From Macrostomum lignano (lineage: Eukaryota), in the NCBI GenBank assembly GCA_002269645.1, contig NIVC01000785.1:124001-188000 (forward strand): a DNA stretch of 64,000 bases. The letters run 5' to 3'. The stretch's first letter is position 1. Each line of letters starts with the position of its first letter. A program made the position numbers and the translations under genes. The notes under the pieces were generated by a model. The model was given only the letters and a program-made list of their open reading frames with translations. It had not been told where the DNA came from and did not search any database. Shown here piece by piece: positions 30,661 through 53,862 of the stretch.

Positions 30661-30755
30661 TGACTCTCCTGATGTGAATAGATTGCTGAAATTCACAGCG
30701 GTGACAAGATGTGATTAGCAGCCGTTACGCCTCCGCATTTTCAGCGGCAGTTGCC

Positions 30756-31109
30756 ATGGACGTAGAGGAAACTTTCCGCCGGCTTCAGTCGCACAAAAGC
30801 GTCATTGGGGTGCTGGTGGTCAGCCAAGATGGCGTCCCGATCCGCAGTTCATTCCCAGATCGGGACCAGACTCAGCGCTACTGCTCCATGGCCCAGCAGC
30901 TGGCTCAGGGCGCCCGAGCTACCCTGGCCGCCTGCGACTCGCCACTGATTGGCGACAGCGGGGCCGGCAGCATCGGCAGCGAGCTCGTGTTTCTGCGACT
31001 GCGTACGAAACGCGGCGAACTGCTTGTGGCGCCTGATCGGGACTTCCTGCTAGCCGTGCTGCAGGAACCGGCCAGCAGTGGTGACATTGGGTCCGGTCTG
31101 GCCGCTTGA
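30756..31109 (+). CDS. DYNLRB: Dynein light chain Roadblock/LC7, intronless, 117 aa
   Basis: MDVEETFRRLQSHKSVIGVLVVSQDGVPIRS...ELVFLRLRTKRGELLVAPDRDFLLAVLQEP; matches the DYNLRB consensus (EVEETLKRLQS, GIPI, FLRIRSK..EIMVAPDKDY). TTTTCAG acceptor ends at 30744. Confidence 0.93.
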   Translation: MDVEETFRRLQSHKSVIGVLVVSQDGVPIRSSFPDRDQTQRYCSMAQQLAQGARATLAACDSPLIGDSGAGSIGSELVFLRLRTKRGELLVAPDRDFLLAVLQEPASSGDIGSGLAA

Positions 31110-31800: not shown

Positions 31801-32261
31801 CAGTTATTCATATTAAATACTATGTCATCTTTTATTGAGGCTGAATCTCAGCGATAATTGTGCAATCACACTGATTTATTATGTTTTACACTCGATTTTC
31901 TACATGTATGATTTGTTATATCAATGTTTTATCGGAGTAGGTACTAAAAAGTCAGTCTTCCCTATAACGGCGCTTGTGCCTTCATTTTGTGCGCGGTAAT
32001 ATTGTTAGATACTTGCATATCAAAGGTTTCTGTTTGTCAGAATTGTTTGGTGTTCAGCTTTTTTGATGACTAAAATATTGTCTTTTCGTTTCTTTTTAAA
32101 TTTATACACGACTTTAGCTTTTCAAATTGTAACTTTGGTCACAACTATGAATACATTTTTAGTGGTGTATGAATGAATGTATGAAAAGTTTTTTAGTGGT
32201 TTCTTCAGTTCGAATGCACAAGCTTCATAAGTGCCATAAGAATATATGAAGTATCATAAGG

Positions 32262-33167
32262 TTCACTGAAGGATCATATAGGGTTCACTGAATGATCATA
32301 GGGCTCACTGAAGGATCATAGGGCTCACTGAAGGATCATATAGGGTTCACTGAAGGATCATATAGGGCTCACTGAAGGATCATAGGGCTCACTGAAGGAT
32401 CATAGGGCTCACTGAAGGATCATATAGGGCTCACTGAAGGATCATAGGGCTCACTGAAGGATCATAGGGCTCACTGAAGGATCATAGGGCTCACTGAAGG
32501 ATCATAGGGCTCACTGAGGGATCATATAGGGTTCACTGAAAGATCATAGGGCTCACTGAAGGATCATAGGGCTCACTGAGGGATCATAGGGCTCACTGAG
32601 GGATCATAGGGCTCACTGAAGGATCATATAGGGTTCACTGAAGGATCATATAGGGTTCACTGAAGGATCATAGGGCTCACTGAAGGATCATAGGGCTCAC
32701 TGAAGGATCATATAGGGCTCACTGAAGGATCATAGGGCTCACTGAAGGATCATAGGGCTCACTGAAGGATCATAGGGCTCACTGAAGGATCATAGGGCTC
32801 ACTGAAGGATCATATAGGGCTCACTGAAGGATCATAGGGCTCACTGAAGGATCATAGGGCTCACTGAAGGATCATAGGGCTCACTGAAGGATCATATAGG
32901 GTTCACTGAAGGATCATAGGGCTCACTGAAGGATCATATAGGGTTCACTGAAGGATCATAGGGCTCACTAAAGGATCATATAGGGTTCACTGAAGGATCA
33001 TAGGGCTCACTGAAGGATCATAGGGCTCACTGAAGGATCATATAGGGCTCACTGAAGGATCATAGGGCTCACTGAAGGATCATAGGGCTCACTGAAGGAT
33101 CATAGGGCTCACTGAAGGATCATATAGGGTTCACTGAAGGATCATAGGGTTCACTAAAGGATCATAT
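32262..33167. repeat. 20/22-bp minisatellite
   Basis: Unit AGGGCTCACTGAAGGATCAT(AT), ~43 copies. Confidence 0.95.
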
Positions 33168-33589: not shown

Positions 33590-36500
33590 TCATTGCAACA
33601 GACTGCCAATCAGCGTTAGCGAATCGGCGCATTCCGAGCGCAGAAAGTGCAGTTCCATGGCGTCCTTGGGCTGAAAGTTGAATTGGGATGAGGATTATGA
33701 TGCACAGTAATGCACAAAGAGCTTGCCAGCATAGACTATGGGAATCACTTTTTACGTAGATGGGATCGATAATATGAAAAGATATTATAATCGCCTGAGA
33801 AAATAGGTCGGGAATTTCCCTATAAATAGATCAGGAATCGCCCTCTAAAAATAGACCCGGAATTACCTCTAAAAATAGATCGAGAATCGCCCTCTAAAAA
33901 TAGACCCGGAATCACCCAGTAAAAAGATCCGCACTGCTCCTCTAAAAATAGACCCGGAATCGCCCTCTAAAAAGATCCGCACTGCTCCTCTAAAAATAGA
34001 CCCGAAATCACCTCTAAAAATAGATCGGGAATTGCCCTTGAAAGTAGATTAAGAATCGCCATCGAAAAGTACATGTAGACCCAAAATCGCGCGATAAAAC
34101 TCAGACCCGGAATTTTCCACTAAAATTTGATCGGGAATCACCCTCTAAAAAGATCCACAATCCAATATACTAAAAATGAAAATCTTGCTTGCTTGTAATC
34201 GATTAGAGAAAAAATGGCTTAACCGATTTTCATGAGACTTGCACTGTTCGATCAGAAATTTTCCCGTGACTGTACATGCATTGTGGCTAAGAAATTTCTC
34301 GATGCTAAAGGCATTAAATATTCGAAAAACATGCTTTTTCGCAAAGGTCAAGCAAACTTTTCGACTTGAAATGCATTGTAAGAATGCTAGAGAAAAAACT
34401 GACTGGTTGAATTCTGATTCTGAAATAGATTGCATCATAACTGAATTGTAACTCCGACTTGAATTGCGTCACAGTATTGAAAATGCAGTGTGGAAGCGTA
34501 GCACCAGACTTGATTTAGATTGCGTAACCATATCCTCAACTTTAATTGAGACTGATACTGACTTGCCTGGGAAATTGATTATGTCATAACTGATTCGTGA
34601 GTGAGTGTTGAATTATATAAGTGCTACAATTTAATTTATAAATTCGATAATAGCTAGCCTAGAAGTGAACAGACTGGACTGCAAATGCAGCGACCTGGGT
34701 TCGAATCTAAGTAGTGAAAAGTTTTTTATTAAAACCTTTTATTAAAGGACAAATAAAGGACAAAAGGCGTCAGGTAAAAAAGCATAGAAGCGTCATGTAA
34801 AAAATCATAGAAGCGTCATGTAAACAATCATAGAAGCGTCATGTAAACAATCATGAAAGCGTCATGAAAAAATCATAGAAGCGTCATGTAAAAAATCAAA
34901 GAAGCGTCATGTAAAAAATCATGAAAGCGTCATGAAAAAATCATAGAAGCGTCATGAAAAAATCATGGAAGCGTCATGTAAAAAATCATAGAAGCGCCAT
35001 GTAAAAAATCATAGAAGCGTCATGTAAAAAATCATAGAAGCGTCATGTAAAAATCAAAGAAGCGTCATGTAAAAAATCATAGAAGCGTCATGTAAACAAT
35101 CATAGAAGCGTCATGTAAACAATCATGAAAGCGTCATATAAACAATCATAGAAGCGTCATGAAAAAATCATGAAAGCGTCATGAAAAAATCATAGAAGCG
35201 TCATGTAAAAAATCAAAGAAGCGTCATATAAAAAATCATAGAAGCGTCATGTAAAAAATCATAGAAGCGTCATGTAAACAATCTTGAAAGCGTCATGTAA
35301 AAAATCATAGAAGCGCCATGTAAAAAATCATAGAAGCGTCATGTAAAAAAGCATAGAAGCGTCATGTAAAAAATCATAGAAGCGTCATGTAAAAAATTCA
35401 TAGAAGCGTCATGTAAACAATCATGAAAGCGTCATAAAGAAATCATAGAAGCGTCATGCAAAATTATAGAAGCGTCATGTAAAAAATCATAGAAGCGTCA
35501 TGTAAAATATCATAGAAGCGTAATGTAAAAAATCATGAAAGCGTCATGAAAAAATCATAGAAGCGTCATGTAAAATATCATAGAAGCGTCATGTAAAAAA
35601 TCATAGAAGCGTCATGTAAAAAATCATAGAAGCGTCATGTAAACAATCATAGAAGCGTCATGTAAAAATCATAGAAGCGCCATGTAAAAAATCATAGAAG
35701 CGTCACGTAAGCAATCATAGAAGCGTCATATAAAAAATCATAGAAGCTTCATGTAAAAAATCATAGAAGCGTCATGTAAAAAAATCATACTGACATCAAA
35801 AATCAAGTGACAAAAAAAATGTCAGACATGAAAGAAGTGTCATGTAAAAATTAAATGAAGCTATTGTGCTGTGCTGGGGAGACTTACTGTGCTAGATGTC
35901 AAGGCTTACGGAGAAAAACTGAGATTACAGGGGGGGGGGTTTCTGAGATGTCAAAGCAAAAGTCAGAAGCTACTTCAAAGTACATGTACTTTACTCAATT
36001 TTTTTATTACATTCTTTGTTGGCTCGCCACGGGGGGGGCGCTGATAGAAGAAGAGTCATGTAAAAAAGAAAAGAAGCACTATGTATACATAAAAGAAGAG
36101 TCATGTCGAAGTTAAAAGATTCATTTGGGAATTGCTACGATGTCAAGGCTTGGAGGGAATCGCTATAGTGCTGTGATTCTTGAAGAAGGAATCACTAAAT
36201 TTTCAAGGCTTAGGGGAGAAGAATTGCTGAGATTTCAAGGCTTTAGGTTGGGTTAAAGTTAGGTTTAGGTCAGGTGTGGGTTGAGGGTTATATTTTATCG
36301 GGTTTCAAGGTTAACAGGGGATTTTTCAGATATCAAGGTTTATGGGGGGCATTGCTGACATGTCAAGGCTCATGGGGGAATAAATGAGATTTCAAGGCTA
36401 AAGTCAGAAGCTACATGTAGTCCATTGAAAACTTTTTTTCTTTATTTGTTGGCTCCTCACGGGAGGGATCGCTGATAGAAAAAGCGTAATGTAAAAAATA

Positions 36501-39500
36501 AAAGAAGCTTCATGTCGAAGTTAAGAGATTCATTTGGGAATCCCTACGATGTTGAGGCTTGCAAGGAATCGCTTTAATGCTGTAGTAGTGCTATAATGAC
36601 TGTTAAAGAGAATTACTGAAATGTCAATGCTTTAGGGTTAGGGTTAGGGTTAGGGTTAGGGTTAGGGTTAGGGCTAGGGTTAGGCTAGGGCTAGGGTTAG
36701 AAGGTTGACAGATTTTTTAAGATTGCAAGGCTTATGGGGCATTGCTGAGATGTCAAGGGGGTTGATATGCTAAGGCTTGTGGGGGGATTTTCTGACATGT
36801 CAAGGCTTACAAGGTATAATGCAAAGAGACGCTTACATGTAGTTTATTAAAAAAAACTTGTACTGCATTTTTTTGGCTCCCCAACGGGGGGCGCTGATTG
36901 CTAGTGCTCCTCTAAAAATAGACCCGGAATTACTTCTAAAAATAGATCGAGAATCGCCCTCTAAAAAAAGACCCGGAATCGCCCACTAAAAGATCCGCAC
37001 TGCTCCTCTAAAAATAGACCCGGAATCGCCCTCTAAAAAGATCCGCACTGCTCTAAAAATAGACCCGAAATTACCTCTAAAAATAGGTCGGGAATTGCCC
37101 TTAAAAGTAGATTAAGAATCGCCATCGAAAAGTACATGTAGACCCAAAATCGCGCGATAAAACTCAGACCCGGAATTTTCCACTAAAATTTGATCGGGAA
37201 TCACCCTCTAATTTAAAAATAGATCAGGAATCGCCTTCTAAGAACCGCTCGTGAATCAGTAGAGTTGCACTCACAATGCCAGCGAAATTCCACACTTCCA
37301 TCAGCCTGTCCCGACAGGCTACGGACTCGAAGAACTCGCCGCAGACGATCACCCGGGGCACTCCGTACGCGGAGGCGGCGTGGACCAGCGTGTCAAAGAA
37401 GGTCTTGATGAAGGCGTAGCTCAGTGATGCGGCAATGTCAGAATAGCTGGGCTTCAGCTCCTCTGGTGTTTTCGATGAAAACGAATAAGTATCTCATTGT
37501 ACTTTTACCAACCGAGTGTCACTATTGGCTAAAGTATTTCTCAGTGTACTTTTAGCAACAAAGCCTGTCATTATTGGCTAGAGTATTTCTCAGTGTACAT
37601 TTAGCAACAGAGCCTGTCACTATTGGCTAAAGTATTTCTCGGTGTACATTTAGCAACAGAGCCTGTCACTATTGGCTCAAGTATTTCCCTGTGTACTTTT
37701 AGCAACAGAGCCCGTCACTATTGGCTAAAGTATTTCCCTGTAAACTTTTAGCAACAGAGCCTGTCACTATTGGCTAAAGTATTTCCTAGTTGTACTTTTA
37801 GCAACTGCGCTCGCGTCACCATGGCCGCCTCACCCATCGAACGCAGATCGTGCAGCTTGCCCAGCGTGAAGACGGCAGCGCCCAGGTCGTACTGCCCATA
37901 GGCGGACTCGGCCGGCAGGAGGTCGCCAATAGTCAGGTCCAGCTTGGCAAGGCTGCCTTCGGCCGCAGAAGCCAGGAATTCGGCCAGGCCGCCATTATCG
38001 CTATGAGGCGGAGGAGGCGATGCGGAGGCGCTCAGGCGTGCCAGGCCGAGCAGATTGCGGTAGCCTAGGATTGGCTCAGTCAACAGGCGGCGGCAGAACG
38101 GCTCCTTGTTGGCTCCCAAGCCGATCTGCGGTGAATGGTCTGTCTGTCACTTCTTTACTGTGAATGGTCTGTCTGTCACTTCTTTACTGTGAATGGTCTG
38201 TCTGTCACTTCTTTACTGTGAATGGTCTGTCTGTCACTTCTTTACTGTGAATGGTCTGTCTGTCACTTTTTTTACTGTGAATGGTCTGTCTGTCACTTCT
38301 TTACTGTGAATGGTCTGTCACTTTTTTACTGTGAATGGTCTGTCACTTTTTTTACTGTGAATGGTCTGTCACTTTTTTTACTGTGAATGGTCTGTCTGTC
38401 ACTTCTTTACTGTGAATGGTCTGCCTGTCACTTCTTTACTGTGAATGGTCTGTCACTTTTTTTACTGTGAATGGTCTGTCACTTTTTTTTACTGTGAATG
38501 GTCTGTCTGTCACTTTTTTACTGTGAATGCTCTGTCTGTCACTTCTTTACTGTGAATGGTCTGTCTGTCACTTCTTTACTGTGAATGGTCTGTCTGTCAC
38601 TTCTTTACTGTGAATGGTCTGTCACTTTTTTACCGTGAATGGTCTGTCACTTTTTTTACTGTGAATGGTCTGTCACTTTTTTTACTGTGAATGGTCTGCC
38701 TGTCACTTCTTTACTGTGAATGGTCTGTCACTTTTTTTACTGTGAATGGTCTGTCTGTCACTTCTTTACTGTGAATGGTCTGTCACTTTTTTTACTGTGA
38801 ATGGTCTGTCACTTCTTTACTGTGAATGGTCTGTCTGTCACTTTTTTACTGTGAATGGTCTGTCACTTTTTTTACTGTGAATGGTCTGTCACTTCTTTAC
38901 TGTGAATGGTCTGTCACTTATTTACTGTGAGTGGTCTGTCACTTATTTACTGTGAGTGGTCTGTCACTTATTTACTGTGAGTGGTCTGTCACTTATTTAC
39001 TGTGAGTAGTCTGTCACACCTTGTCGACAGTCAGCTCTCGGGGGCCCATCTCTGCCACTATCGCCGGGCCACGAGCCGCGCCGCCAGCCTTCAATGCTGC
39101 ACTGTCCTCCTCGTCGTTGTGACGTCGCATCCGACGCGCTAGACGCTCGTTGATGAGACGCCACGATGGCGAGTGGGTCACCAGCTGGGAGCAGTGCGGC
39201 GGCTTCGGATGCCACAGAGGCCCAACGGGAGCCCGCAGATCGTCCAGGCCTGACAGCCAGCAGAGCGACAGACCCCACAGGTGGCAGAGCCTCGGGTCGG
39301 GCCGGGACAGCCTGTCACCAGGGGGGGGGGGGTGAATCGAAGCAATCAGCAGGGATTATAAAAGGGTACCGACGGGATACAATACTGATAACAATAATTA
39401 CAGGGCTGCTAATACTGTACGCAGGTAGGGCGCCTACTCAAATGAAATGGCGCCTTCTTCAATAAAATGGCGCCTTCTTCAATAAAATGGCGCCTTCTTC

Positions 39501-40614
39501 AACAAAATGGCGCCTTCTTCGATAAAATGGCGCCTTCTTCAACAAAATGGCACGCCTTCTTCAATAAAATGGCGCATTCTTCAATAAAATGGCGCCTTCT
39601 TCAATAAAATGGCGCCTTCTTCAATAAAATAGCGCCTTCTTCAATAAAATGGCGCCTTCTTCAATAAAATGCCGCCTTCTTCAATAAAATGGCGCCTTCT
39701 TCAACAAAATGGCGCCTTCTTTAACAAAATGGCACACCTTCTTCAACAAAATGGCACACCTTCTTCACCAAAATGGCACACCTTCAAGAAAATGGCACGC
39801 CTTCTCAAATGAAACGGCGCCTCCTCGAATGGAATGGCGCTTACTAGAATGAAATGGCGCCTACTCAAATGAAATGGCGCTCACTCCAATGCAATGGCGC
39901 CTACTCAAATAGCGCCAACTCAAATCAAACGTCGCCTTCGAATGAAATGGCGCCTACTCAAATGAAATGGCGCCTACTCAAATTAAAAGGCGCCTACTCA
40001 AATAAAATGCCGCCTCCGAATGGAATGGCGCCTACTCAAATGAAATGGCACCTTCTTAAATAAAATGGCGATTTCTCGAATCAAATGGCGCCAACTTAAA
40101 AGAAATGGCGCCTACTCAACTAAGATGGCGCGCCTTCTCCAATAAAATGGTCCCTACTCAAATCAAATGAGTCTTCTCAAATGAAATGGCGCCTACTCCA
40201 ATGAAATGGCGCCTTGCCAAATAATATTCTGACAAAGCTCGTGCCGAGCGCATTTTAAGGCCCAGAAAGCGTCAGATTTGAAATTGCTCACCCAATGTCC
40301 TTGCCAGCTAGAGCCTGCTCTAGCGCCTGCTCAACTCCAGAATCTCCTTCGCCAGCATCAGCACCTTGTCGGCGTTTCATCAAGATTGCTAGTTTGTTAC
40401 AATCGGCTGGCAACAGCTTAGCAACCGTTGCTAAGGCAGAATCGTCGCTCAACCTCACCATAGCAACGGTTGCTAGGCCTCCGGTTTCTACCGGTATGGC
40501 TACAAGACGAGCGAACTGTTCGATTTGAAGTGAAGAATCAACAATAACAGCGGCAGAGTTTGGCTTCAGCCTGGAGGCGACAAGTTCAATTCTAAGTTGC
40601 AGTTTGAGCTCCAT
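33590..40614 (-). CDS. Type II pantothenate-kinase-fold protein, predicted catalytically dead, ~391 aa
   Basis: Exons 40614-40292, 39311-39020, 38125-37834, 37462-37275, 33670-33590; GT-AG and phase-consistent (1176 nt, no internal stop). Collinear by eye with PANK: LAEFLASAAEGSLAKLDLTIGDL (FDEALELASKGDSTQADKLVRDI), AVFTLGKL (VASSFGNM), YSDIAASL (KEDLARAT), PRVIVCGEFF (NRVVFVGNFL), LHFLRSE...LIGSLL (ALFLEHEGYFGAVGALL). Confidence 0.82.
33800..34160. repeat. Degenerate short-unit repeat, left copy of a ~305-bp higher-order unit
   Basis: CTCTAAAAATAGACCCGGAATCGCC-type units; 33842-34148 is nearly identical to 36908-37211. Confidence 0.85.
34780..35785. repeat. 22-23 bp satellite inside Helitron copy 1
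   Basis: Unit ~AAAAATCATAGAAGCGTCATGTA. Confidence 0.95.
36632..36700 (+). repeat. Interstitial telomeric repeat (TTAGGG)n
   Basis: 7 perfect TTAGGG followed by CTAGGG/TTAGG variants. Confidence 0.95.
36905..37240. repeat. Right copy of the ~305-bp higher-order unit
   Basis: Near-identical to 33842-34148. Confidence 0.85.
37500..37800. repeat. 49-bp minisatellite in a PanK-like intron
   Basis: Unit TTTTAGCAACAGAGCCTGTCACTATTGGCTAAAGTATTTCTCAGTGTAC, ~6 copies. Confidence 0.92.
38130..39015. repeat. 25/29-bp minisatellite forming essentially the entire intron 38126-39019
   Basis: Unit GTGAATGGTCTGT(CTGT)CACTTCTTTACT. Confidence 0.95.
39428..40215. repeat. 20-bp degenerate minisatellite
   Basis: Unit AAATGGCGCCTTCTTCAATA grading into AAATGGCGCCTACTCAAATG. 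Confidence 0.9.
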
Positions 40615-40797
40615 GCGCAATGAATTGTTGTGTTTCTGAAAACATGCCCACAGCTGTTAGTTAAATGCGAGGGGCTTAGATAACAGCCCGCTTATCGAGA
40701 TCGGTGCTCACTGCTTAATGAGCTGCACTGCACAGGTAAATATGGCGCCAATTCCATAAAAAACTAAGAGCTTTCCACTACTCAGACTTAACACCCT

Positions 40798-41388
40798 CCC
40801 GACCTAGGGACCTCACCAGACCCGGAGGATTACCCGCCCGACCTAGGGATTTCCCTCCCGACCAGGGGATTTCCCTCCCGACTTAGGGATTTACCTCACG
40901 GCCTAGGTATTTCCTTCCCGACCTGAGGATACCCCTCACGACCTAAGGATTTCCCTCACGACCTAGGGATTTTTCTCCCGACCAAGGGATTTCCTTCCCG
41001 ACTTAGGGATTTCCCTCACGACCTAGGGATTGCCCTCACGGCCTAGGGATTCCCTCACAACCTAGGGATTTCCCTCACGACCTAGGGATTTCCCTCACAG
41101 CCTAGGTATTTCCCTCCCGACATAAGAATTTCCCTCACGACCTAGGGATTTCCCTCACGACCTAGGGATTTCCCTCACGACCTAAGAATTTCCCTCACGA
41201 CCTAGGGATTTTCCTCCCGACCAAGGGATTTCCCTCACGACCTGAGGATATCCCTCACGACCTAGGGATTTCCCTCCCGACCTGAGGATATCCCTCACGA
41301 CCTAGGGATATCCCTCACGTACCTAAGGATTTCCCTCCTGATCTAAGAATCACCCTCTCGACCTAGGGATTTTTCTCCCAACCTGAGG
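40798..41388. repeat. 20-bp minisatellite
   Basis: Unit CCTAGGGATTTCCCTCACGA. Confidence 0.92.
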
Positions 41389-43600: not shown

Positions 43601-43617
43601 GCAACTCTAGGTTGGGC

Positions 43618-43994
43618 TCAACCCCTGAACACCTCTTTGTAGACGCCGGCGCCGAACTGCTGCATTTGGCCGGCGTTGTCGGGCCGCGCGCCAACCGGAT
43701 TGTACGGCGCTGCAAAGTCCGGGAACCCGTCGACTCCGACGCCGGCAGCGCCGGGGGCAGTGGCGAGAGAAGCACCAGGCATCGACGAGGTGTTGAGCTT
43801 CTCGATGACGCTTTCGATCATGGCGGCGTTCTGCTTGTGGAGGCCGTCCACACTGAGCAGGCTGGGGAACACGGCCGAAAGCTCCAGAAGCCGCTTGGTG
43901 GCTGGGTACGATTGGGGTGCGGTTGAGGGGATACATGTGTGAGATTTGACACTGATAGAGACTGAGACTGAGGCAGACAGAAAGACAGACAGGC

Positions 43995-44059
<65 letters not shown>

Positions 44060-44062
44060 GGG

Positions 44063-44119
<57 letters not shown>

Positions 44120-44164
44120 GGTAGACAGACAGACACAGACAGACAGACAGACAGACAGACAGGC

Positions 44165-44253
<89 letters not shown>

Positions 44254-44264
44254 GGTAGACAGAC

Positions 44265-44323
<59 letters not shown>

Positions 44324-44374
44324 GGCAGACAGACAGAAAGACAGACAGGCAGACAGACAGACAGACAGACAGGC

Positions 44375-44423
<49 letters not shown>

Positions 44424-44446
44424 GGTAGACAGACAGACAGACAGAC

Positions 44447-44495
<49 letters not shown>

Positions 44496-44520
44496 GGTAG
44501 ACAGACAGACACAGACAGAC

Positions 44521-44552
<32 letters not shown>

Positions 44553-47500
44553 GCAGACAGACAGAAAGACAGACAGGCAGACAGACAGGCAGACAGACAG
44601 AAAGACAGACAGGCAGACACTAACCGGCCAGCCTGACGGTGAGGTTCAGCCAGGGATCTGAGGCCAGCATGTCGGCAGTCCAGCCACGCATGGCGATGTC
44701 CTTAGAGCGCAGGTAAATCCAGAACAGGCCAATCACGGCAGAGTGAACGCTGATCACCGAGCTGAGATCATGGAACAGGTCCTCCGGGTACTGGATCCCG
44801 ATATCTGGGGAAAAGCGAAATGGAAAAGGCGGAGTCTGCTAGACGCGTGAAACTGACATGAAGGCTTTGGAAATTTCCTTAAAAAATTCCTACCCTCTCT
44901 AGGGAGGAAAACTCCCCGCGACCTTGGAAACACGCAATGGGGCCAGCCAGGCAGCGGAAATCAAGCAGGTGGATATGGCCCGCATAATTTGCTTTCACGT
45001 GGAAATATGCTGCTGGATTAATTTTAATTAACACTAACTGAAATGCATTGGCTACGCTAGGGATATGGAATACTTAGAAGAATCCGAGCACTTGATGGAT
45101 TCTCAAGCGACTATCAGGGCGATTCTTAAGCGACAATCAGGGCGATTCTCAAGCGACTATCAGGGCGATTCTTAAGCGACAATCAGGGCGATTCTTAAGC
45201 GACAATCAGGGCGATTCTTAAGCGATAGTCAGGGCGATTCTCAAGCGACTATCAGGGCGATTCTCAAGCGACAATCAGGGCGATTCTCAAGCGACAATCA
45301 GGGCGATTCTCAAGCGACAATCAGGGCGATTCTCAAGCGACTATCAGGGCGATTCTCAAGCGATAGTCAGGGCGATTCTCAAGCGACAATCAGGGCGATT
45401 CTCAAGCGATAGTCAGGGCGATTCTCAAGCGACAATCAGGGCGATTCTCAAGCGACAATCAGGGCGATTCTCAAGCGATAAACTAGGCGATTCTCAAGCG
45501 ACAATCAGGGCGATTCTCAAGCGACAATCAGGGCGATTCTCAAGCGACAATCAGGGCGATTCTCAAGCGATAGTCAGGGCGATTCTCAAGCGACAATCAG
45601 GGCGATTCTCAAGCGATAGTCAGGGCGATTCTCAAGCGACAATCAGGGCGATTCTCAAGCGACAATCAGGGCGATTCTCAAGCGATAAACTAGGCGATTC
45701 TCAAGCGATAAAAATGTCAATAGGCAATTCTAAACAAGAGACCAAAACCGCCTCAAAGAAACTTCTGAAAGCCAAAACCGCTCTACTTACAAGGCGAAGT
45801 CAGGCAGAAGGCGGACAGGAAGGCCATCTCGTTCTCCTCTATACGAAGTGAGTCCCACTTGCGTGAGACGTCAAAGAATTTGAGAAACAGCTGCGACAGC
45901 ATCGGATGTCCAGCCGACTGCAGAAAGCGCCTGAAGATTAAGCGGAATTGTGAGATTAAGAGGATGAACTAAAGGTTACTAGATATGCGATATGAAAATG
46001 AAATGACTGCAGGAGGGCTGTCCCACAGCCAACGCTGACGGCAATTCTGCCCATTCCGGTGACTCACTACTGAGCACATACAAGCGCTGCACTGCACTCA
46101 TACACACTGATCACGCAGGGTGTACAGCGGGCTCTGACTTTCAAATCGTCGGGCAAATTGATTTGAGCAATATTTTTAATATTTAATCTTTGGTTTAAAA
46201 ATATGCAGTAACTGATTTAGACTGCTTACTGACTGATTCAAACTACTCAGGCACTGACTCAAACTACTCAGGCACTGACTCAAACTACTCAGGCACTGAC
46301 TCAAACTACTCAGGCACTGACTCAAACTACTCAGGCACTGACTCAAACTACTCAGGCACTGACTCAAACTACTCAGGCACTGACTCAAACTACTCAGGCA
46401 CTGATTCAAACTACTCAGTCATTGACTCAAACTACTCAGGCACTGACTCAAACTACTCAGTCATTGACTCAAACTACTCAGGCACTGATTCAAACTACTC
46501 AGGCACTGACTCAAACTACTCTGGCACTGACTCAAACTACTCAGGCACTGACTCAAACTACTCAGGCACTGACTCAAACTACTCAGGCACTGATTCAAAC
46601 TACCCAGGCACTGACTCAAACTACTCAGGCACTGACTCAAACTACTCAGGCACTGACTCAAACTACTCAGGCACTGACTCAAACTACTCAGGCACTGACT
46701 CAAACTACTCAGGCACTGATTCAAACTACTCAGTCATTGACTCAAACTACTCAGGCACTGACTCAAACTACTCAGTCATTGACTCAAACTACTCAGGCAC
46801 TGATTCAAACTACTCAGGCACTGACTCAAACTACTCTGGCACTGACTCAAACTACTCAGGCACTGACTCAAACTACTCAGGCACTGACTCAAACTACTCA
46901 GGCACTGATTCAAACTACCCAGGCACTGACTCAAACTACTCAGGCACTGACTCAAACTACTCAGGCACTGACTCAAACTACTCAGGCACTGATTCAAACT
47001 ACTCAGTCATTGACTCAAACTACTCAGGCACTGACTCAAACTACTCAGGCACTGATTTAAACTACTCAGGCACTGACTCACACTACTCAGGCACTGACTC
47101 AAACTACTCAGTCACTGACTCAAACTATTCAGTCATTGACTCAAACTACTCAGGCACTGACTCAAACTACTCAGTCACTGACTCAAACTACTCAGTCATT
47201 GACTCAAACTACTCAGTCATTGACTCAAACTACTCAGTCATTGACTCAAACTACTCAGTCATTGACTCAAACTACTCAGTCACTGACTCAGACTGCTCAG
47301 TAGCTGACTCAAACTACTCAGTCATTGACTCAAACTACTCAGTCACTGACTCAGACTGCTCAGTAGCTGACTCAAACTACTCAGTCACTTATCTTAACTA
47401 CTCAGTCATTGACTCAAACTACTCAGTCATTGACTCAAACTACTCAGTCATTGACTCAAACTACTCAGGCACTAACTCAAACTACTCAGTCATTGACTCA

Positions 47501-50500
47501 AACTACTCAGTCATTGACTCAAACTACTCAGTCATTGACTCAAACTACTCAGTCACTGACTCAGACTGCTCAGTAGCTGACTCAAACTACTCAGTCATTG
47601 ACTCAAACTACTCAGTCACTGACTCAGACTGCTCAGTAGCTGACTCAAACTACTCAGTCACTGACTCAAACTACTCAGTCACTGACTCAGACAGCTGAGT
47701 CTCAAGCAACACAAGCATCCAAATGCAAAAACTCCTACCTGGTCAGCCGAAACCTCATAGTCGGATCAATGATAAAGTCCTGTTGACTCTGTACCAGAGA
47801 GGCACAAAACCGCATACCAACCAACTTGAAGCTGTGTTGAACAATCAGACGCTTCTTGTCCGAGTCGGTGAGCGCGTCCGAGCAGCTGGACACGGACACT
47901 CTGTCCCGATGAGTTTCGAAGTGCTGCTGCTGCTGCGGCGCCGGCTCCGGCATCGATTGCGACGATGTGCCGCCGAAAATGTTGCGACTAAAGGCCACGA
48001 TTCGAAGCATGAGCTGGGGAATGTAATCCACTAGGGTGTGCAAGACTTCGCCTTCGTCCGCTGGGCTGGGCTCTTGTAGCTGAAAATAGCGACAGGGACC
48101 AGAGGTTGCGGAAAGCTAACAGGTCTAACAGGTTACGTCTGTCTAACATGCAAGACCTGTGTCTAACATGCAAGACCTGTGTCTAACATGCAAGACCTGT
48201 GTCTAACATGCAAGACCTGTGTCTAACATGCAAGACCTGTGTCTAACATGCAAGACCTGTGTCTAACATGCAAGACCTGTGTCTAACAAGCAAGACCTGT
48301 GTCTAACATGCAAGACCTGTGTCTAACAAGCAAGACCTGCGTCTAACATGCATGACCTGTGTCTAACATATAAGAACTGTGTCTAACATGTAACACCTAC
48401 GTCTAACATGTAACACCTACGTCTAACATGTAACACCTACGTCTAACATTTAAAACCTGTGTCTAACATGCAAGACCTGTGTCTAACACCCAAGAGATGT
48501 ATCTAACATGCAAGTCTTCTTCTGAGTGAGCATATAAGCACAATGCGGTGTGTATTTCTATGGCCAAGGATATGCGAACAAATGCATGCTGCTTACAGCA
48601 GAAAGCACTTTTAAAAATCGGACTTTCGTGACATGAAAGCTAAAATAAGCCGCTAACTTTTAGGGCATATGATTTTTTAAACACACATTAATACTTGTGA
48701 AAGCAAGCAAAAGTGACACTACTTCTGGGACACCCCTCGTACTTTTAAGAAGAAAATTATCACTGACGACTACAAAATAAGAGACTGCGCAGCTAAGGGG
48801 CCTGACTCAATTAGACAACTCTGAGGCGGAAAATCCACGTCTCCGTAATTTAAATCTCAAAAAACCATTCTCAAAGGCTTGAAGAATCTAAGACGCTATC
48901 AATTTGCAGGCATCTCTGTTGCAGGCAAATCTGTTTCCGAAAACGAAGTGAGAGCGTTCGTGACTCTCCAGTGACACAGCCGCTTTTCTGTCAGAAAATT
49001 CGAACCCTAATCTTCTTCGACAGCCGAATAAATACGCGATGCAGTAATCCAGCGGTTTGGATTATCCCAATCAAACTGATTAAATATCATAAAGAGAGCA
49101 ACAGACTCAAACAAAACGGGAAAATAATCATTTCAGCTTAGGGCTAAAAAAATCTAGCGAATGCTTTCCAGGTTGCGAGTTTGAAGCTCTCTTCTGCTTT
49201 GCAACATAGCAACCACTCACCTCAACTAATTCAATAGGACGGACGTACCTGTGTTAAGCCTAATCCATCAGTCACACTAAGCCTAATTCATTAGTCACAC
49301 TAAGCCTAATCCATCAGTCACACTAAGCCTAATTCATTAGTCACACTAAGCCTAATCCATCAGTCACACTAAGCCTAATCCATCAGTCACACTAAGCCTA
49401 ATCCATCAGTCACACTAAGCCTAATCCATCAGTCACACTAAGCCTAATTCATCAGTCACACTAAGTCAACAATTACTGTTCTCACCTGCGCCAGTCTGTC
49501 GTTCATAAATTGTCGCATGCGATTCTGAGAAAAGTAGAACGTCTGCCGATGACCCTCCAGAATGAGGCGGGTGTTCTCGGCGATGACGTCACCGCAGGCG
49601 GGATTGCCAGCGAATTGACTATTCAAATCGGCTTCCCAATAGCCCACAAATTTGTCTATGGCCGTCAAGATGAGATGCGACACTGAGTTATTAAACGATA
49701 AGGTGTTGTGCAGATCTTCCAGCTCAGCGGCTCGCTGAGGACCGGCCAGACGACGGCAGATCATTGCCAGCGGGGTGGCCATCAGGCAGGACTTCTCTAG
49801 CCAAACCTTCTTTGGCGCTCTGGCTGTGTCCGGCGTTGCAACGGCCGGAGCTGAAGCCGGCGAACCGGCGACGCTCCGGTTGGCGCCAGGAATCGGAATG
49901 GCGCCAGAGCACGAGGCTGTCGGCGAATTACTCGAAGATGCGGCATCGGGCATCGATGATCGCCAACCGGTGCCTTGGCGGCTTATCAATTTGAGGCACT
50001 TCACCGAAGCGGGCGTCTGCTGCCAATGCGGAGGCGTGGGAGGCGTCACCGGTTCAGGCGGCGACGGGTAGGTGAGCGGGCCGACGCCGCCACTGCCGGC
50101 TCCCTGCTGCATGAGCTGCGAAGCCACCTGCCGACCGGAGAGCCGGCCTTCCAGCAGGCTTGGGGGCGGTGGCGGCTGCTGCTGCTGCTGCTTCTGCTGC
50201 TGTTGCGTTTTTACAACTGGCTCCTTGCGAAAGCAGGATCGTCTGCTGACCTGAGATTCGAATTCGCGTCGTTTCTGATCAATATAGTCCAGAAGGTGCT
50301 GGTCAGTGATGCCGGACAGTTGGGTGGCAGCGCTCTGGCAGCCCGGCAGCATGATCTGATCGTCTGATGGAGCGACGACAGCAGCTGCTCCGGCGGACGA
50401 GGCGCCTCTTAATCGAAGCTTAGCCCGCCTGCCCAGCTTGGACCGCTGGCGGCCCATGTTGACGGCGCAGCACTTCTTCAGGCGGCACCACTGGCATGTG

Positions 50501-53445
50501 TTGCGCGTCTGCGGCGTCATCTCCAGTGGGACAGAGTGGGCGCAGGCGCCGCCGATGTTGCGGCTGGAGACGATGCGGCGGAAGAAACCCTGCAGGGGTG
50601 CCAGATTGGAGTGCCAGATACCAGATTGGACTGCCAAACTGGAGTGCCAGACTGGAGTGCCAGATGATTGGAGTGCCAGATGATTGGAGTGCCAGATGAT
50701 TGGAGTGCCAGATACAAGATTGAAGTGCCAAACTTGAGTACCATATTCGAGGTGGGAAATGGTGTGGGTGTGGATAGATGGAGTGGGACTGGGATAGATG
50801 GGGTGGGACTGGGATAGATGGAGTAGGACTTGGATAGATGAAGTGGGACTGGGATAGATGGAGTGGGACTGGGATAGATGGGGTGGGACTAGGATAGATG
50901 GGGTGGGACTAGGATAGATGGGGTGGGACTAGGATAGATGGGGTGGGACTAGGATAGATAGGGTGGGACTTGGATAGATGGGGTGGGACTTGGATAGATG
51001 GGGTGGGACTAGGATAGATAGGGTGGGACTTGGATAGATGGGGTGGGACTTGGATAGATGGGGTGGGACTTGGATAGATGGGGTGGGACTAGGATAGATG
51101 GGGTGGGACTAGGATAGATAGGGTGGGACTTGGATAGATGGGGTGGGACTTGGATAGATGGGGTGGGACTTGGATAGATGGGGTGGGACTAGGATAGATA
51201 GGGTGGGACTTGGATAGATGGGGTGGGACTTGGATAGATGGGGTGGGACTTGGATAGATGGGGTGGGACTAGGATAGATAGGGTGGGACTTGGATAGATG
51301 GGGTGGGACTTGGATAGATGGGGTGGGACTTGGATAGATGGGGTGGGACTTGGATAGATGGGGTGGGACTAGGATAGATGGGGTGGGACTAGGATAGATG
51401 GGGTGGGACTAGGATAGATAGGGTGGGACTAGGATAGATGGGGTGGGACTAGGATAGATGGGGTGGGACTAGGATAGATGGGGTGGGACTAGGATAGATG
51501 GGGTGGGACTAGGATAGATAGGGTGGGACTTGGATAGATGAAGTGGGACTAAGATAGATGGGGTGGGACTAGGATAGATGGGGTGGGACTTGGATAGATG
51601 GGGTGGGACTAGGATAGATGGGGTGGGACTAGGATAGATGGGGTGGGACTAGGATAGATGGGGTGGGACTAGGATAGATAGGGTGGGACTTGGATAGATG
51701 AAGTGGGACTAGGATAGATGGGGTGGGACTAGGATAGATGGGGTGGGACTTGGATAGATGGGGTGGGACTAGGATAGATGGGGTGGGACTAGGATAGATG
51801 GGGTGGGACTAGGATAGATGGGGTGGGACTAGGATAGATGGGGTGGGACTAGGATAGATGGGGTGGGACTAGGATAGATGGGGTGGGACTTGGATAGATG
51901 GGGTGGGACTAGGATAGATGAGTGAAACCAGATGATTTCATAGAGATAGAGAAACTCATCTACAAGCCCCTACAATCGCATTTATGGACCCTCGTAAGCA
52001 GTCAGAGAACATCAGATAGACGATGAAAATTCAGCCATCGTGATGAAGCAGAGAAACTGAGAGTGGTGCAGCTGCATAACCGAACAGCTTAGCCGAGTTA
52101 ATTTTGTGCCCTACAGGTGCGGGCCAACTCCCTACACGATGGCATCTGCCTCCCAAAGAGCTCCCCATGGCAGCGCTATGCCCGCTAATTGAATAGGCGC
52201 TTTGGGAATCAATAAATTTGCTGAAATACAGGAACCTTTCATTCATAATTGTTAATTGACGCTCTAAATTAATACGGGCACATTTAAAAGGTTTTAAGGC
52301 TTTTATTGTCTTTGTTTATTATTTTCAACAGACAAATGTTGCTGGTAGCAATACGCAGCTTTGCTTTATCAAAGAATCGTTCCACAGCAGCTGCTCTGGG
52401 TATTGAGTATGCAGGCTAAAAATACCCGAGTAGTCTTTCTCAAAGCCCAAGTAGTCACTCTCAATGCCCGAGTAGTCACTCTCAATGCCCGAGTAGTCAC
52501 TCTCAATGCCCGAGTAGTCACTCTCAATACCCGAGTAGTCACTCTCAATGCCCGAGTAGTCACTCTCAATACCCGAGTAGTCACTCTCAACACCCAAGTA
52601 GTCACTCTCAATACCCGAGTAGTCACTCTCAATACCGGAGTAGACACTCTCAATTCCCGAGTAGTCACTCTCAATATCCAAGTGGACACTCGCAATATCC
52701 AAGTGGACACTCTCAATATCCAAATAGTCACTCTCAATACCCAAGTAGTCACTCTCAATACCCAAGTAGTCACACTCAACACTTAAGTAGTCACTCTCAA
52801 TACCCGAGTAGACACTCTCAATACCCAAGTAGTCACTCTCAATACCCAAGTCTCAATATCCAAGTGGACACTCGCAATATCCAAGTGGACACTCTCAATA
52901 TCCAAGTGGACACTCTCGATACCCAAATAGTCACTCTCAATACCCAAGTAGTCACACTCAATACCCAAGTAGTCACTCTCAATACCCGAGTAGACACTCT
53001 CAATACCCAAGTAGTTACTCTCAATACCCAAGTAGTCACTCTCAATACCCGAGTAGTCACTCTCAATACCCAAGTAGTCACTCTCAATACCCGAGTAGTC
53101 ACTCTCAATACCCGAGTAGACACTCTCAATACCCAAGTAGTCACTCTCAATACCCGAGTAGTCACTACAAGGACAAGACTTCAGTGACAATAGTCTCACC
53201 TTGCAGCCTTCGCAGGCGGGCACACCGTAATGAACGCCGCTGGCAGCGTCCTGACAGACTGCACACCGACTTAGCGCAGTGGACAGGCTGTCGCTGCCGC
53301 CCTCTTGGAGACCCTCAACGCCGCGCTTGTCATCGACATAGTCATCAACAGTGGTCAAGTCGTCATAGTTATCCTCATCGTCAAGCTCGCACACTTCCGA
53401 TTGATCTGAGTGCAACTGCTGTTGTTTGTGCCTTTTGAGACTCAT
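43618..53445 (-). CDS. Nuclear hormone receptor, NR1 subfamily, most like ROR/HR3 (NR1F), ~764 aa
   Basis: Exons 53445-53200, 50589-49486, 48079-47739, 45930-45791, 44804-44625, 43901-43618; GT-AG and phase-consistent (2295 nt). DBD CAVCQDAASGVHYGVPACEGCK|GFFRR...CQWCRLKKC, then KLGR. LBD: RIVAFSRNI (H3), LTDSDKKRLI, IEENEMAFLSAFCL (H8), AF-2-like VYKEVF (ROR LYKELF). Confidence 0.92.
43973..44619. repeat. (CAGA)n microsatellite filling NR intron 5
   Basis: Directly visible; source of the spurious 160-337 aa ORFs. Confidence 0.97.
45105..45712. repeat. 23-bp minisatellite in NR intron 4
   Basis: Unit GCGATTCTCAAGCGACAATCAGG. Confidence 0.95.
46225..47695. repeat. 21-bp minisatellite in NR intron 3
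   Basis: Unit ACTCAAACTACTCAGGCACTG / ...GTCATTG, ~70 copies. Confidence 0.96.
48137..48510. repeat. 20-bp minisatellite in NR intron 2
   Basis: Unit GTCTAACATGCAAGACCTGT. Confidence 0.94.
49255..49465. repeat. 23-bp minisatellite in NR intron 2
   Basis: Unit AAGCCTAATCCATCAGTCACACT. Confidence 0.93.
50598..50745. repeat. ~16-bp repeat abutting the NR exon 2 acceptor
   Basis: Unit GATTGGAGTGCCAGAT. Confidence 0.85.
50772..51920. repeat. 20-bp G-rich minisatellite in NR intron 1
   Basis: Unit GGATAGATGGGGTGGGACT(A/T), ~57 copies. Confidence 0.96.
52425..53165. repeat. 21-bp minisatellite in NR intron 1
   Basis: Unit TAGTCACTCTCAATACCCGAG; inflates the 52783-53445 ORF with GIESDY repeats that are intronic. 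Confidence 0.94.
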
Positions 53446-53792
53446 TAACGTACTGGAATAGTGCAGTGAATAGATGATTTAGTTGACGACGTTAATACCG
53501 CGGCACGAGAAACTTCGTTTCTTACAAAACCTTTGAAGGCCGGCTTTACAATAATAGCAATAACTAGCAATCTACGCCCCCCGTTGGGGAGCCAAAGAAA
53601 TGCAATACATATTTTTTTAATAAGCTACATGTATCCTTGAAATCTTAAAAAATCTCCTGTCAAACCTTGTAACCCTTGACATGTCAGTAATTCCCCCCCC
53701 CCTACAAGCTTTAACATATCAACTTCCCCCCCCTTGACATCTCAGCAATGCCCCCAATAAGCCTTGGAAATCTAAAAATATCTGTCAACCTT

Positions 53793-53862
53793 CTAACCCT
53801 AACCCTAGCCTAACCCCTAACCCTAACCCTAACCCTAACCCTAACCCTAACCCTAACCCTAA
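53793..53862 (-). repeat. Interstitial telomeric repeat (CCCTAA)n
   Basis: Directly visible, with a few variant units. Confidence 0.95.

What the first reader, a model, noticed from the sequence alone, without database searches (positions are those of the whole stretch)
33590..40614. Intact stand-alone pseudo-pantothenate kinase with all phosphate-binding loops erased
Seen: a clean five-exon, 391-codon ORF with canonical splice sites and no stops, even though its last intron holds a Helitron. Knowledge: type II PanKs need the DIGGTLVK loop, the catalytic Glu (human PANK3 E138, in KLDELDC), the NIGSGVS loop and GTSLGGGT. By-eye alignment gives VIVDSSLQIE, RPDPRLC (Glu to Pro), AEMGPRELT and LTEPILGYRN at these positions, while the C-terminal dimer/regulatory half stays recognisable. 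Inference: a maintained pseudoenzyme, possibly an acyl-CoA sensor or a dominant-negative heterodimer partner of active PanK. Unlike the known amniote pseudokinase PANK4, it has no DUF89 phosphatase domain.
Basis: partly seen in the sequence, partly recalled or inferred. Interest (0 to 1): 0.72.

Follow-up and report, generated by a model that had tools for sequence, protein, structure and literature searches.

The report
Dead pantothenate-kinase look-alike gene in flatworm
The flatworm Macrostomum lignano keeps an expressed, selectively maintained gene whose protein has the shape of pantothenate kinase, the first enzyme of coenzyme A synthesis, but has lost every residue needed for catalysis, so it probably acts by binding rather than as an enzyme.

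Summary
A five-exon, 391-codon ORF lies on the minus strand at 33590-40614, with GT-AG at every intron. It matches three transcript-derived GenBank proteins of Macrostomum lignano exactly.

It is a very divergent type II pantothenate kinase (PanK) homologue:
- Pfam Fumble scores only 13.4 bits (cut-off 28.5).
- phmmer links it at E = 1.2e-9 to four orphan Fumble proteins, and hhalign gives 98.75 % probability.
- The top 50 PDB matches to its AlphaFold model are all type II PanKs.

In a family alignment every nucleotide-binding and catalytic position is replaced, among them G19S, K24Q, E138P, S192P, G193R, R207L and GGGT>GYRN. There is no DUF89 domain.

Against a diverged second copy in the same genome, dN/dS is about 0.24 (p = 0.004), and exons are 97-99 % identical where introns are 78-91 %. 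The gene is therefore maintained.

Its function is unknown. I favour a non-catalytic binding role through the conserved C-terminal domain. The acyl-CoA-sensor idea gains no support.

Dead PanKs are already known (the PANK4 kinase domain, apicomplexan PanK2, a Bacillus anthracis type II PanK). This is a new, extreme, stand-alone animal variant. Whether the genome also has a canonical PanK could not be checked.

The Helitron call for the last intron is largely right.

The parts
40292..40614 (-). Exon 1 (ATG at 40612-40614; aa 1-108). It holds the remnant of the PHOSPHATE-1 loop, VDSSLQIEQ (40516-40542), and the TGGG-motif remnant ADAGEG (40345-40362).
   Evidence: in-frame upstream stop
39020..39311 (-). 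Exon 2 (aa 108-205). It holds RPDPRLC (39284-39304), in which Pro114 replaces the catalytic Glu138 of PANK3. It also holds the LWHPKPP motif shared with the orphan clade (39197-39217) and AEMGPRELT (39029-39055), which replaces NIGSGVS.
37834..38125 (-). Exon 3 (aa 206-303). It holds TEPILGYRN (38054-38080), which replaces GTSLGGGT, and a lineage-specific insert, SASASPPPPHSDNGG.
37275..37462 (-). Exon 4 (aa 303-365). This is the best-conserved C-terminal core (DIAASL..., VCGEFFE); Glu345 replaces Asn322 of PANK3.
33590..33670 (-). Exon 5 (aa 366-391 plus stop), with the C-terminal FLR...IGSLLQ that matches the PanK C-terminus FLEHEGYFGAVGALL.
34149..36908 (+). Non-autonomous Helitron-like insertion in intron 4. 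It is not part of the gene's function and is absent from the two other gene copies.

Best explanation
The gene encodes a stand-alone, catalytically dead descendant of type II pantothenate kinase in Macrostomum lignano. The protein keeps the two-lobed ASKHA/PanK fold, and in particular the C-terminal lobe. From my own knowledge of PanK structures, that lobe forms most of the dimer interface. The protein has lost the Gly-rich loops that hold ATP phosphates, the catalytic Glu, and the Arg/Ser residues that hold pantothenate.

Shown:
- homology to type II PanK
- replacement of the catalytic and nucleotide-binding motifs
- an intact coding frame in three genomic copies
- transcript-based gene models
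- purifying selection since the copies diverged.

Inferred:
- It cannot phosphorylate pantothenate.
- It works by binding, not catalysis.
- It most probably binds through the conserved C-terminal lobe, as a dimer with itself or with the worm's active PanK.

Because the residues a PanK protomer lends to its partner's site are also gone, a heterodimer would be inactive. The protein would then act as a brake on CoA synthesis, not as a complementing subunit like apicomplexan PanK2.

I put about 0.85 on 'no PanK activity', about 0.8 on 'maintained by selection', and only about 0.3 on the heterodimer-brake mechanism specifically.
For: Gene structure and identity. The GenBank models are transcript-derived (PMC5730564).

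Homology:
- phmmer against 1.84 billion representatives finds, besides the protein itself and one repeat-protein match (P0008, TSP1 repeats), only P0006 (E = 1.2e-9), P0007 (1.6e-6) and P0009 (4.3e-4).
- These three score 79-97 bits on Pfam Fumble.
- hhalign of the M. lignano family against that clade gives probability 98.75 % and E = 1.4e-16 over aa 87-391.
- A profile that includes them hits PANK1/2/3 and yeast CAB1 in the PDB at E = 1e-17 to 1e-12.
- The AlphaFold2 model has pLDDT 63.9 and pTM 0.68, with the C-lobe at 70-90. Its top 50 Foldseek PDB hits are all type II PanKs, with E from 6.5e-13 and TM 0.45-0.67.

Motif loss (PANK3 numbering, sequence verified): D17 is kept, and G19S, G20L, T21Q, K24Q, T114A, G116E, E138P, S192P, G193R, S195L, R207L, T211P, G215Y, G216R, T217N and N322E are substituted. 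All 11 other aligned family members keep E138 and G19.

Selection:
- Against the diverged copy L001 there are 12 synonymous and 10 non-synonymous differences plus one in-frame 3-bp indel.
- dN/dS is 0.24-0.26; binomial p = 0.004 against neutrality.
- Codons 250-378 carry no non-synonymous change.
- Exons are 96.6-98.9 % identical, against 78-91 % for introns and flanks.
- The third copy, L007, differs only by 2 synonymous sites.
Against: - No biochemical data exist; catalytic death is inferred from sequence alone.
- The N-terminal lobe is modelled at low confidence (pLDDT 40-59). The P-loop alignment rests on MAFFT only, because hhalign starts at aa 87.
- The structure model was built from an alignment of PanK homologues, so the fold match is partly circular.
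- The selection test rests on 22 substitutions between two copies in one genome.
- No orthologue from another flatworm was found.
- Sequence identity to PANK3 is only 15 %, so retention of a PanK-compatible dimer interface is uncertain.
- I could not check that M. lignano has a canonical PanK for it to pair with.
Confidence: 0.7

Rival explanations
1. It is a repurposed PanK-fold protein with a role unrelated to CoA synthesis, such as a scaffold or a ligand or protein binder. It forms homodimers only and never meets the active PanK.
For: - It is only 15 % identical to PANK3 and about 23 % to its nearest relatives.
- Both the cis and the trans active-site residues are replaced.
- It carries lineage-specific inserts (aa 204-218 and 236-250).
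- It clusters with a very sparse orphan clade that itself lacks the GGGT motif and scores far below the PanK equivalog cut-offs.
Against: Nothing points to any particular alternative partner or ligand. The neighbouring genes, a nuclear receptor and a Roadblock/LC7 gene, give no functional hint. The best-kept part is the lobe used for dimerisation in PanKs.
Confidence: 0.3
2. It is a functionless relic: a duplicated PanK-like gene drifting toward pseudogenisation that happens still to be open and transcribed.
For: - All catalytic motifs are lost.
- No orthologue is detectable outside M. lignano.
- A 2.76-kb transposon is tolerated in its last intron in one copy.
- M. lignano is a recent polyploid with much redundancy (PMC5730564).
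Against: - The 391-codon frame and all eight splice sites are intact in three copies.
- dN/dS is 0.24, with p = 0.004.
- The only indel is in frame.
- Exons are far better conserved than introns.
- Divergence to about 23 % identity without a single stop or frameshift is very unlikely under neutrality.
Confidence: 0.07
3. It is still an enzyme: a kinase or phosphotransferase that uses non-canonical residues or a different substrate.
For: Asp26 (PANK3 D17, the metal-binding Asp of PHOSPHATE-1) and Asp113 (D137) are kept. The overall ASKHA topology is retained.
Against: The protein has lost the Gly-rich PHOSPHATE-1, G(S/T)G and GGGT loops, and its catalytic Glu has become Pro. From my own knowledge, the Gly-rich phosphate- and adenosine-binding loops are shared across ASKHA phosphotransferases generally.
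Confidence: 0.06
4. It is a gene-model artefact, for example a chance ORF assembled across repeats or wrongly chosen exons.
For: The introns and flanks are dominated by minisatellites, which can mislead assemblers.
Against: My independent reconstruction equals three transcript-derived GenBank proteins. The same five exons and splice sites occur at three syntenic loci with different intron lengths. Homology to PanK runs along the whole protein.
Confidence: 0.01

Closest known systems
Canonical type II pantothenate kinases (human PANK1-3, yeast CAB1, S. aureus PanK-II; Pfam Fumble PF03630)
   Same: It has the same fold and domain order. The top 50 Foldseek PDB hits are exclusively these enzymes. 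The C-terminal lobe aligns directly, and the length is similar, with no extra domains.
   Different: It scores far below every family threshold: 13.4 against 28.5 bits for Pfam, and 15.2 against 234 bits for NF009842. It is 15 % identical to PANK3. The catalytic Glu and all nucleotide- and substrate-binding motifs are replaced.
Orphan PanK-like clade P0006 / P0007 / P0009 / P0011 (unnamed; from a coral-reef long-read metagenome, an NCBI assembly and one SRA run)
   Same: These are the nearest relatives by phmmer and hhalign. They share a (Y/H)PxPP motif after the catalytic helix, YGxY and DIAASL motifs, loss of the GGGT motif, and a stand-alone size of about 350-370 aa.
   Different: They keep D-x-G-x-(S/T)-x-x-K, TG, Glu138 and G-S, which the M. 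lignano protein has lost. They pass the Pfam Fumble threshold. Their source organisms are unknown. P0006 comes from Tara Pacific coral metagenome run ERR14224706 (PMC13083261).
Amniote PANK4 kinase-like domain (pseudo-pantothenate kinase)
   Same: It is a type II PanK homologue made inactive by evolutionary substitutions (PMC9352595; PMC8366970).
   Different: PANK4 is fused to an active DUF89 phosphatase, which carries its function. Here there is no DUF89. From my own knowledge, PANK4 has lost only a few catalytic residues, whereas this protein has lost all motifs.
Apicomplexan PanK2 (PfPanK2 / TgPanK2)
   Same: It is a stand-alone PanK paralogue whose nucleotide-binding motifs deviate strongly, and it acts as a partner of an active PanK1 (PMC8366970; bioRxiv 10.64898/2026.01.22.701186).
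   Different: PanK2 keeps Tyr254'/Tyr258' and so completes one shared active site. The flatworm protein has Leu and Ser in those columns, so it could not complement a partner. No heteromer has been shown here.
Bacillus anthracis type II PanK homologue reported as inactive
   Same: It is a stand-alone type II PanK-family protein without demonstrable activity (as cited in PMC8366970).
   Different: It is bacterial and about 270 aa long. I did not compare sequences.

Membership tests
Type II pantothenate kinase (Pfam Fumble PF03630 / TIGR00555 / NF009842) | Profile score above the curated threshold | tested here: not met
   Pfam gives 13.4 bits (cut-off 28.5), covering aa 253-378 only. NF009842 gives 15.2 bits (cut-off 234), and TIGR00555 gives no hit.
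Type II pantothenate kinase (Pfam Fumble PF03630 / TIGR00555 / NF009842) | Common descent, shown by significant similarity through intermediates | tested here: met
   phmmer gives E = 1.2e-9 to P0006, which scores 97 bits on Fumble. hhalign gives 98.75 % probability and E = 1.4e-16.
Type II pantothenate kinase (Pfam Fumble PF03630 / TIGR00555 / NF009842) | Two-lobed ASKHA fold of PanK-II type | tested here: met
   The AF2 model has pTM 0.68. The top 50 PDB matches are all PanK-II, with E from 6.5e-13 and TM 0.45-0.67. The N-lobe is low-confidence, and the input alignment was made of PanK homologues.
Type II pantothenate kinase (Pfam Fumble PF03630 / TIGR00555 / NF009842) | PHOSPHATE-1 loop D-x-G-G-(S/T)-x-x-K | tested here: not met
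   The sequence is D26-S-S-L-Q-I-E-Q, i.e. G19S, G20L, T21Q and K24Q.
Type II pantothenate kinase (Pfam Fumble PF03630 / TIGR00555 / NF009842) | Catalytic Glu (PANK3 E138) | tested here: not met
   It is Pro114. Glu is present in all 11 other aligned members, and the same register is seen in hhalign.
Type II pantothenate kinase (Pfam Fumble PF03630 / TIGR00555 / NF009842) | G-(S/T)-G loop (PANK3 191-193) and the GGGT loop (214-217) | tested here: not met
   The sequences are G-P-R and G-Y-R-N.
Type II pantothenate kinase (Pfam Fumble PF03630 / TIGR00555 / NF009842) | Pantothenate kinase activity | not testable with these tools
   This needs a recombinant-protein assay.
PANK4-type pseudo-PanK | C-terminal DUF89 phosphatase domain fused to the kinase-like domain | tested here: not met
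   The protein ends at aa 391. There is no DUF89 hit in the protein or in downstream ORFs, and the next gene is a Roadblock/LC7 gene on the opposite strand.
Apicomplexan PanK2-type heteromer subunit | Degenerate nucleotide-binding motifs | tested here: met
Apicomplexan PanK2-type heteromer subunit | Retains the residues lent in trans to the partner's active site (Tyr254', Tyr258') | tested here: not met
   Leu and Ser occupy these columns. The local alignment is uncertain by 1-3 residues around the YGQY motif.
Apicomplexan PanK2-type heteromer subunit | Physical complex with an active PanK | not testable with these tools
   This needs co-IP or AP-MS.
YqgF/RuvX (the name given in UniProt) | Match to the RuvX/YqgF profile | tested here: not met
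   There is no Pfam hit other than Fumble at E <= 10. The UniProt label is not backed by Pfam.
Helitron (the insert in intron 4) | 3' end CTRR preceded by a short GC-rich hairpin; insertion between host A and T; no terminal inverted repeats; more than one copy | tested here: met
   Both copies end ...GGCTCCCCAACGGGGGGCG..GATTGCTAG|T, with host A before the 5' end. A 7-bp hairpin sits 11 nt before CTAG. A second copy lies at 53560-57567 (-) and is 87 % identical.
Helitron (the insert in intron 4) | 5' terminus TC, and no duplication of host DNA | tested here: not met
   The 5' end reads TATACTA..., i.e. TA rather than TC. About 307 bp of host intron is present on both sides of the insert.

The most novel reading that the evidence does not exclude
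The flatworm gene is the most degenerate member of a previously unrecognised, very sparsely distributed eukaryotic PanK-like clade. The clade is marked by a (Y/H)PxPP motif and loss of the GGGT loop; four orphan relatives were found among 1.84 billion cluster representatives. The flatworm gene has become a dedicated non-catalytic regulator. It would pair with the worm's active PanK to form dead heterodimers and so throttle CoA synthesis, a mode of PanK control not described in animals.
Probability: 0.2. Interest if true: 0.65.

Novelty: new variant of a known kind. Interest (0 to 1): 0.42.

Why it matters
Pantothenate kinase sets the rate of coenzyme A synthesis. Why many organisms keep apparently dead PanK copies is an open question stated in the literature (PMC8366970).

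The two dead eukaryotic PanKs whose mode of action is described are not clean tests of what the fold alone can do:
- PANK4 works through a fused phosphatase.
- Apicomplexan PanK2 still completes one active site.

A stand-alone animal PanK-fold protein with every cis and trans catalytic residue removed, yet under purifying selection, would be such a test. M. lignano is tractable for this: transgenesis is established (PMC5730564), and, from my own knowledge, so is RNAi.

In practical terms, three GenBank 'hypothetical proteins' and a UniProt 'YqgFc domain-containing protein' can be re-annotated as PanK-like pseudoenzymes.

Tried and rejected
- **Direct family and structure searches with the single protein.** Pfam, NCBIfam and PDB phmmer gave only sub-threshold or irrelevant hits. 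Homology had to be reached through intermediates.
- **Word-index homologue searches.** All three returned almost nothing beyond the protein itself, four orphan relatives and bacterial type II PanKs. No named eukaryotic relative turned up, so the clade's taxonomy stays unknown.
- **Source of the relatives.** Accession look-ups showed only that P0006 comes from a Tara Pacific coral metagenome.
- **Metagenome scan.** A scan with the clade alignment found nothing.
- **First AlphaFold run.** The 5-sequence alignment gave pLDDT 41 and was unusable. I did not fold-search it.
- **An alternative P-loop.** ETGG at aa 43-46 could have been the real one. I rejected this because the flanking strand and helix (ATVAMVRLSDDSALA) align with beta3/alpha1 of the relatives (TVHSYVYKSSDLDAAL), which puts ETGG in the beta2-beta3 loop.
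- **Expression data.** The gene ids Mlig021129, Mlig020999 and Mlig024293 appear in no paper text and in neither of two supplement sets.
- **Third copy L007.** It is too similar to inform on selection (2 synonymous differences; introns 99.6-99.8 % identical).
- **Bacterial promoter/terminator scan.** Not applicable to this eukaryotic gene.
Full report
**1. What is in the sequence**

The finding lies in a eukaryotic window whose GC-rich exons (60 % GC, GC3 67 %) sit among AT-rich introns filled with minisatellites (37-45 % GC). On the minus strand I reconstructed five exons: 40292-40614, 39020-39311, 37834-38125, 37275-37462 and 33590-33670. All four introns are GT...AG. The CDS is 1176 nt and has no internal stop, giving 391 aa. 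An in-frame stop lies 14 codons upstream of the ATG.

The protein is 100 % identical to Macrostomum lignano UniProt A0A1I8GUU1 and to GenBank PAA76868.1 and PAA58443.1. The window corresponds to contig NIVC01000785.1, where all five exons are identical and identically spaced. The GenBank annotation of that assembly was derived solely from a genome-guided RNA-seq transcriptome (PMC5730564). The exon structure and transcription therefore have independent, though indirect, support.

**2. Is it a pantothenate kinase relative?**

Direct searches are weak:
- Pfam Fumble gives E = 0.045 and 13.4 bits against a 28.5-bit cut-off, and only for aa 253-378.
- NCBIfam type II PanK gives 15.2 bits against a 234-bit cut-off.
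- PDB phmmer finds nothing relevant.

An exhaustive phmmer search of 1.84 billion cluster representatives found four proteins besides the query itself. One (P0008) is a TSP1-repeat protein with no Fumble match. The other three are relatives: P0006 (E = 1.2e-9), P0007 (1.6e-6) and P0009 (4.3e-4). A fourth relative, P0011, appeared later. These are stand-alone proteins of 352-372 aa. The three scanned against Pfam pass Fumble at 79-97 bits, and all four stay far below the PanK equivalog cut-offs.

Further links:
- Profile-profile comparison of the M. lignano sequences with this clade gives 98.75 % probability and E = 1.4e-16 over aa 87-391.
- A joint profile hits human PANK1-3 and yeast CAB1 in the PDB at E = 1e-17 to 1e-12.
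- A 12-sequence alignment gave an AlphaFold2 model with pLDDT 63.9 and pTM 0.68. The C-lobe blocks are mostly at 70-90 and the N-lobe at 40-59.
- The top 50 Foldseek PDB hits to that model are all type II PanKs (CAB1, PANK1/2/3, S. aureus), with E from 6.5e-13 and TM 0.45-0.67.

No other ASKHA family competes. The fold result is partly circular, because the input alignment consisted of PanK homologues. The sequence chain of homology is independent of it.

**3. Are the catalytic motifs gone?**

I checked my recalled PANK3 sequence against PDB 3sms (exact match) and aligned it with the two M. lignano forms, the four orphan relatives and six bacterial type II PanKs. Using PANK3 numbering, the flatworm protein compares as follows.

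| PANK3 feature | Flatworm protein |
|---|---|
| D17 | kept (D26) |
| G19, G20, T21, K24 | S, L, Q, Q |
| T114, G116 | A, E |
| D137 | kept (D113) |
| E138 (catalytic Glu) | P114 |
| S192, G193, S195 | P, R, L |
| R207 | L |
| T211 | P |
| G215, G216, T217 | Y, R, N |
| N322 | E |

All 11 other aligned family members keep G19 and E138.

Residues that PANK3 lends across the dimer interface (Y254', Y258', V268', A269') are also changed; their role is from my own knowledge and from PMC8366970. I considered ETGG at aa 43-46 as an alternative P-loop. I rejected it because the adjacent strand and helix align with beta3/alpha1 of the relatives.

The four orphan relatives are intermediate. They retain D-x-G-x-(S/T)-x-x-K, TG, Glu138 and G-S, but they too lack GGGT.

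**4. Stand-alone?**

Yes. The ORF stops at aa 391, and there is no DUF89 or any other domain. Downstream ORFs show no DUF89. The next gene is a Roadblock/LC7 gene on the other strand at 30711-31109. Upstream lies a zf-C4 nuclear receptor gene.

**5. Is it maintained?**

The assembly holds three syntenic copies, each downstream of the nuclear receptor gene.

- **L007.** This copy is nearly identical to the window: 2 synonymous differences in the CDS, and introns 1 and 3 and the alignable 3' part of intron 4 at 99.6-99.8 % identity. It is uninformative about selection.
- **L001.** This is a diverged copy, which I take to be the homeologue left by genome duplication. It has the same five exons and splice sites. 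There are 12 synonymous and 10 non-synonymous differences and one in-frame 3-bp indel. dN/dS is 0.24-0.26.

With 74 % of sites non-synonymous, finding 10 or fewer non-synonymous changes among 22 has p = 0.004. None of the non-synonymous changes falls in codons 250-378. Exons are 96.6-98.9 % identical, whereas introns and flanks are 78-92 % identical. An open 391-codon frame at only about 23 % identity to its nearest relatives also argues against long neutral decay.

**6. What it most likely does**

Loss of every Gly-rich loop and of the catalytic base makes pantothenate phosphorylation very unlikely. This is an inference from established ASKHA/PanK mechanism. The conserved, confidently modelled part is the C-terminal lobe.

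I therefore favour a binding role through that lobe, either as a homodimer or paired with the active PanK. Because the trans-acting residues are gone, a heterodimer would be dead. That would make the protein a brake on CoA synthesis. This differs from apicomplexan PanK2, which keeps Tyr254'/258' and completes one site (bioRxiv 10.64898/2026.01.22.701186).

The acyl-CoA-sensor idea has no support, because the known contact residues are replaced. None of this was tested.

**7. Comparison with what is known, and novelty**

Inactive PanK homologues are already known:
- the amniote PANK4 kinase domain, fused to a functional DUF89 phosphatase (PMC9352595)
- PfPanK2 and TgPanK2
- a B. anthracis type II PanK (PMC8366970).

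This protein differs in three ways. It is a stand-alone animal protein. It has lost all motifs, both cis and trans. It belongs with four orphan sequences to a clade so sparse that the three homologue searches found no other member and a JGI metagenome scan found none. One orphan comes from a coral-reef metagenome, and two come from a single sequencing run.

The public names, 'hypothetical protein' and 'YqgFc domain-containing protein', do not recognise it as PanK-like. I rate it a new variant of a known kind, of moderate interest.

**8. The Helitron**

The last intron is 3604 bp in the window, against 475 bp in L001 and 541 bp in L007. The excess is a 2.76-kb insertion at about 34149-36908 (+). 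A second copy lies at 53560-57567 (-) and is 87 % identical.

Both copies end GGCTCCCCAACGGGGGGCG..GATTGCTAG followed by T, and both begin TATACTAAAAATG after a host A. A 7-bp hairpin sits 11 nt before CTAG. These are Helitron hallmarks, with two exceptions. The 5' end is TA rather than the canonical TC. About 307 bp of host intron is duplicated on both sides of the insert, which I cannot explain.

Noticed in passing
window 34149-36908 (+) and 53560-57567 (-): Two copies, 87 % identical, of a non-autonomous Helitron-like element. The 5' end reads TATACTAAAAATG after a host A. The 3' end has a hairpin, GGCTCCCCAACGGGGGGC, then GATTGCTAG before a host T. The first copy carries a 23-bp minisatellite (34767-35789, 45 copies) and a short (TTAGGG)n-like tract near 36640-36690. 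The 5' dinucleotide is TA, not the canonical TC.
   Followed up: partly
window 33842-34148 and 36909-37215: About 307 bp of host intron (L007 8790-9096) is present on both sides of the Helitron-like insert, at 99.8 % and 96.5 % identity to the empty site. Helitrons normally create no target duplication. The cause is unexplained; it may be a rearrangement within the 24/48-bp minisatellite.
   Followed up: partly
window 32247-33166, 37492-37805, 38131-39018, 39429-40215, 40794-41372: Each intron and both flanks of the gene carry their own distinct minisatellite (periods 20, 49, 29, 20 and 20 bp; 6-45 copies). Array lengths differ between the three gene copies; for example, intron 2 is 894 bp here and 2279 bp in L007.
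   Followed up: partly
window 43607-44620, 49456-50637, 52783-53445 (-): These are exons of a roughly 757-aa zf-C4 nuclear receptor gene lying directly upstream of the PanK-like gene. The same neighbour is found at all three loci. The second Helitron-like copy lies just beyond its most upstream zf-C4 exon.
   Followed up: no
window 30711-31109 (+): A single-exon Roadblock/LC7 (dynein light chain) ORF (Pfam E = 4.9e-15) lies about 2.5 kb downstream of the PanK-like gene, on the opposite strand (convergent).
   Followed up: no
L004 and L005 (run DRR639055); L002 (ERR14224706); L003 (GCA_046766455.1): The four nearest relatives are intronless genes on short genomic contigs, with GC-rich CDS and AT-rich flanks. 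Two different paralogues (P0009, P0011) come from one sequencing run, so at least one unknown organism or sample carries two members of this orphan PanK-like clade.
   Followed up: partly
UniProt A0A1I8GUU1 / A0A1I8HWE0 (the window protein and its diverged second form): The automatic name 'YqgFc domain-containing protein' has no support from Pfam, which gives no RuvX/YqgF hit at E <= 10. From my own knowledge, YqgF and the ASKHA lobes share an RNase-H-like fold, and the name probably reflects that.
   Followed up: partly
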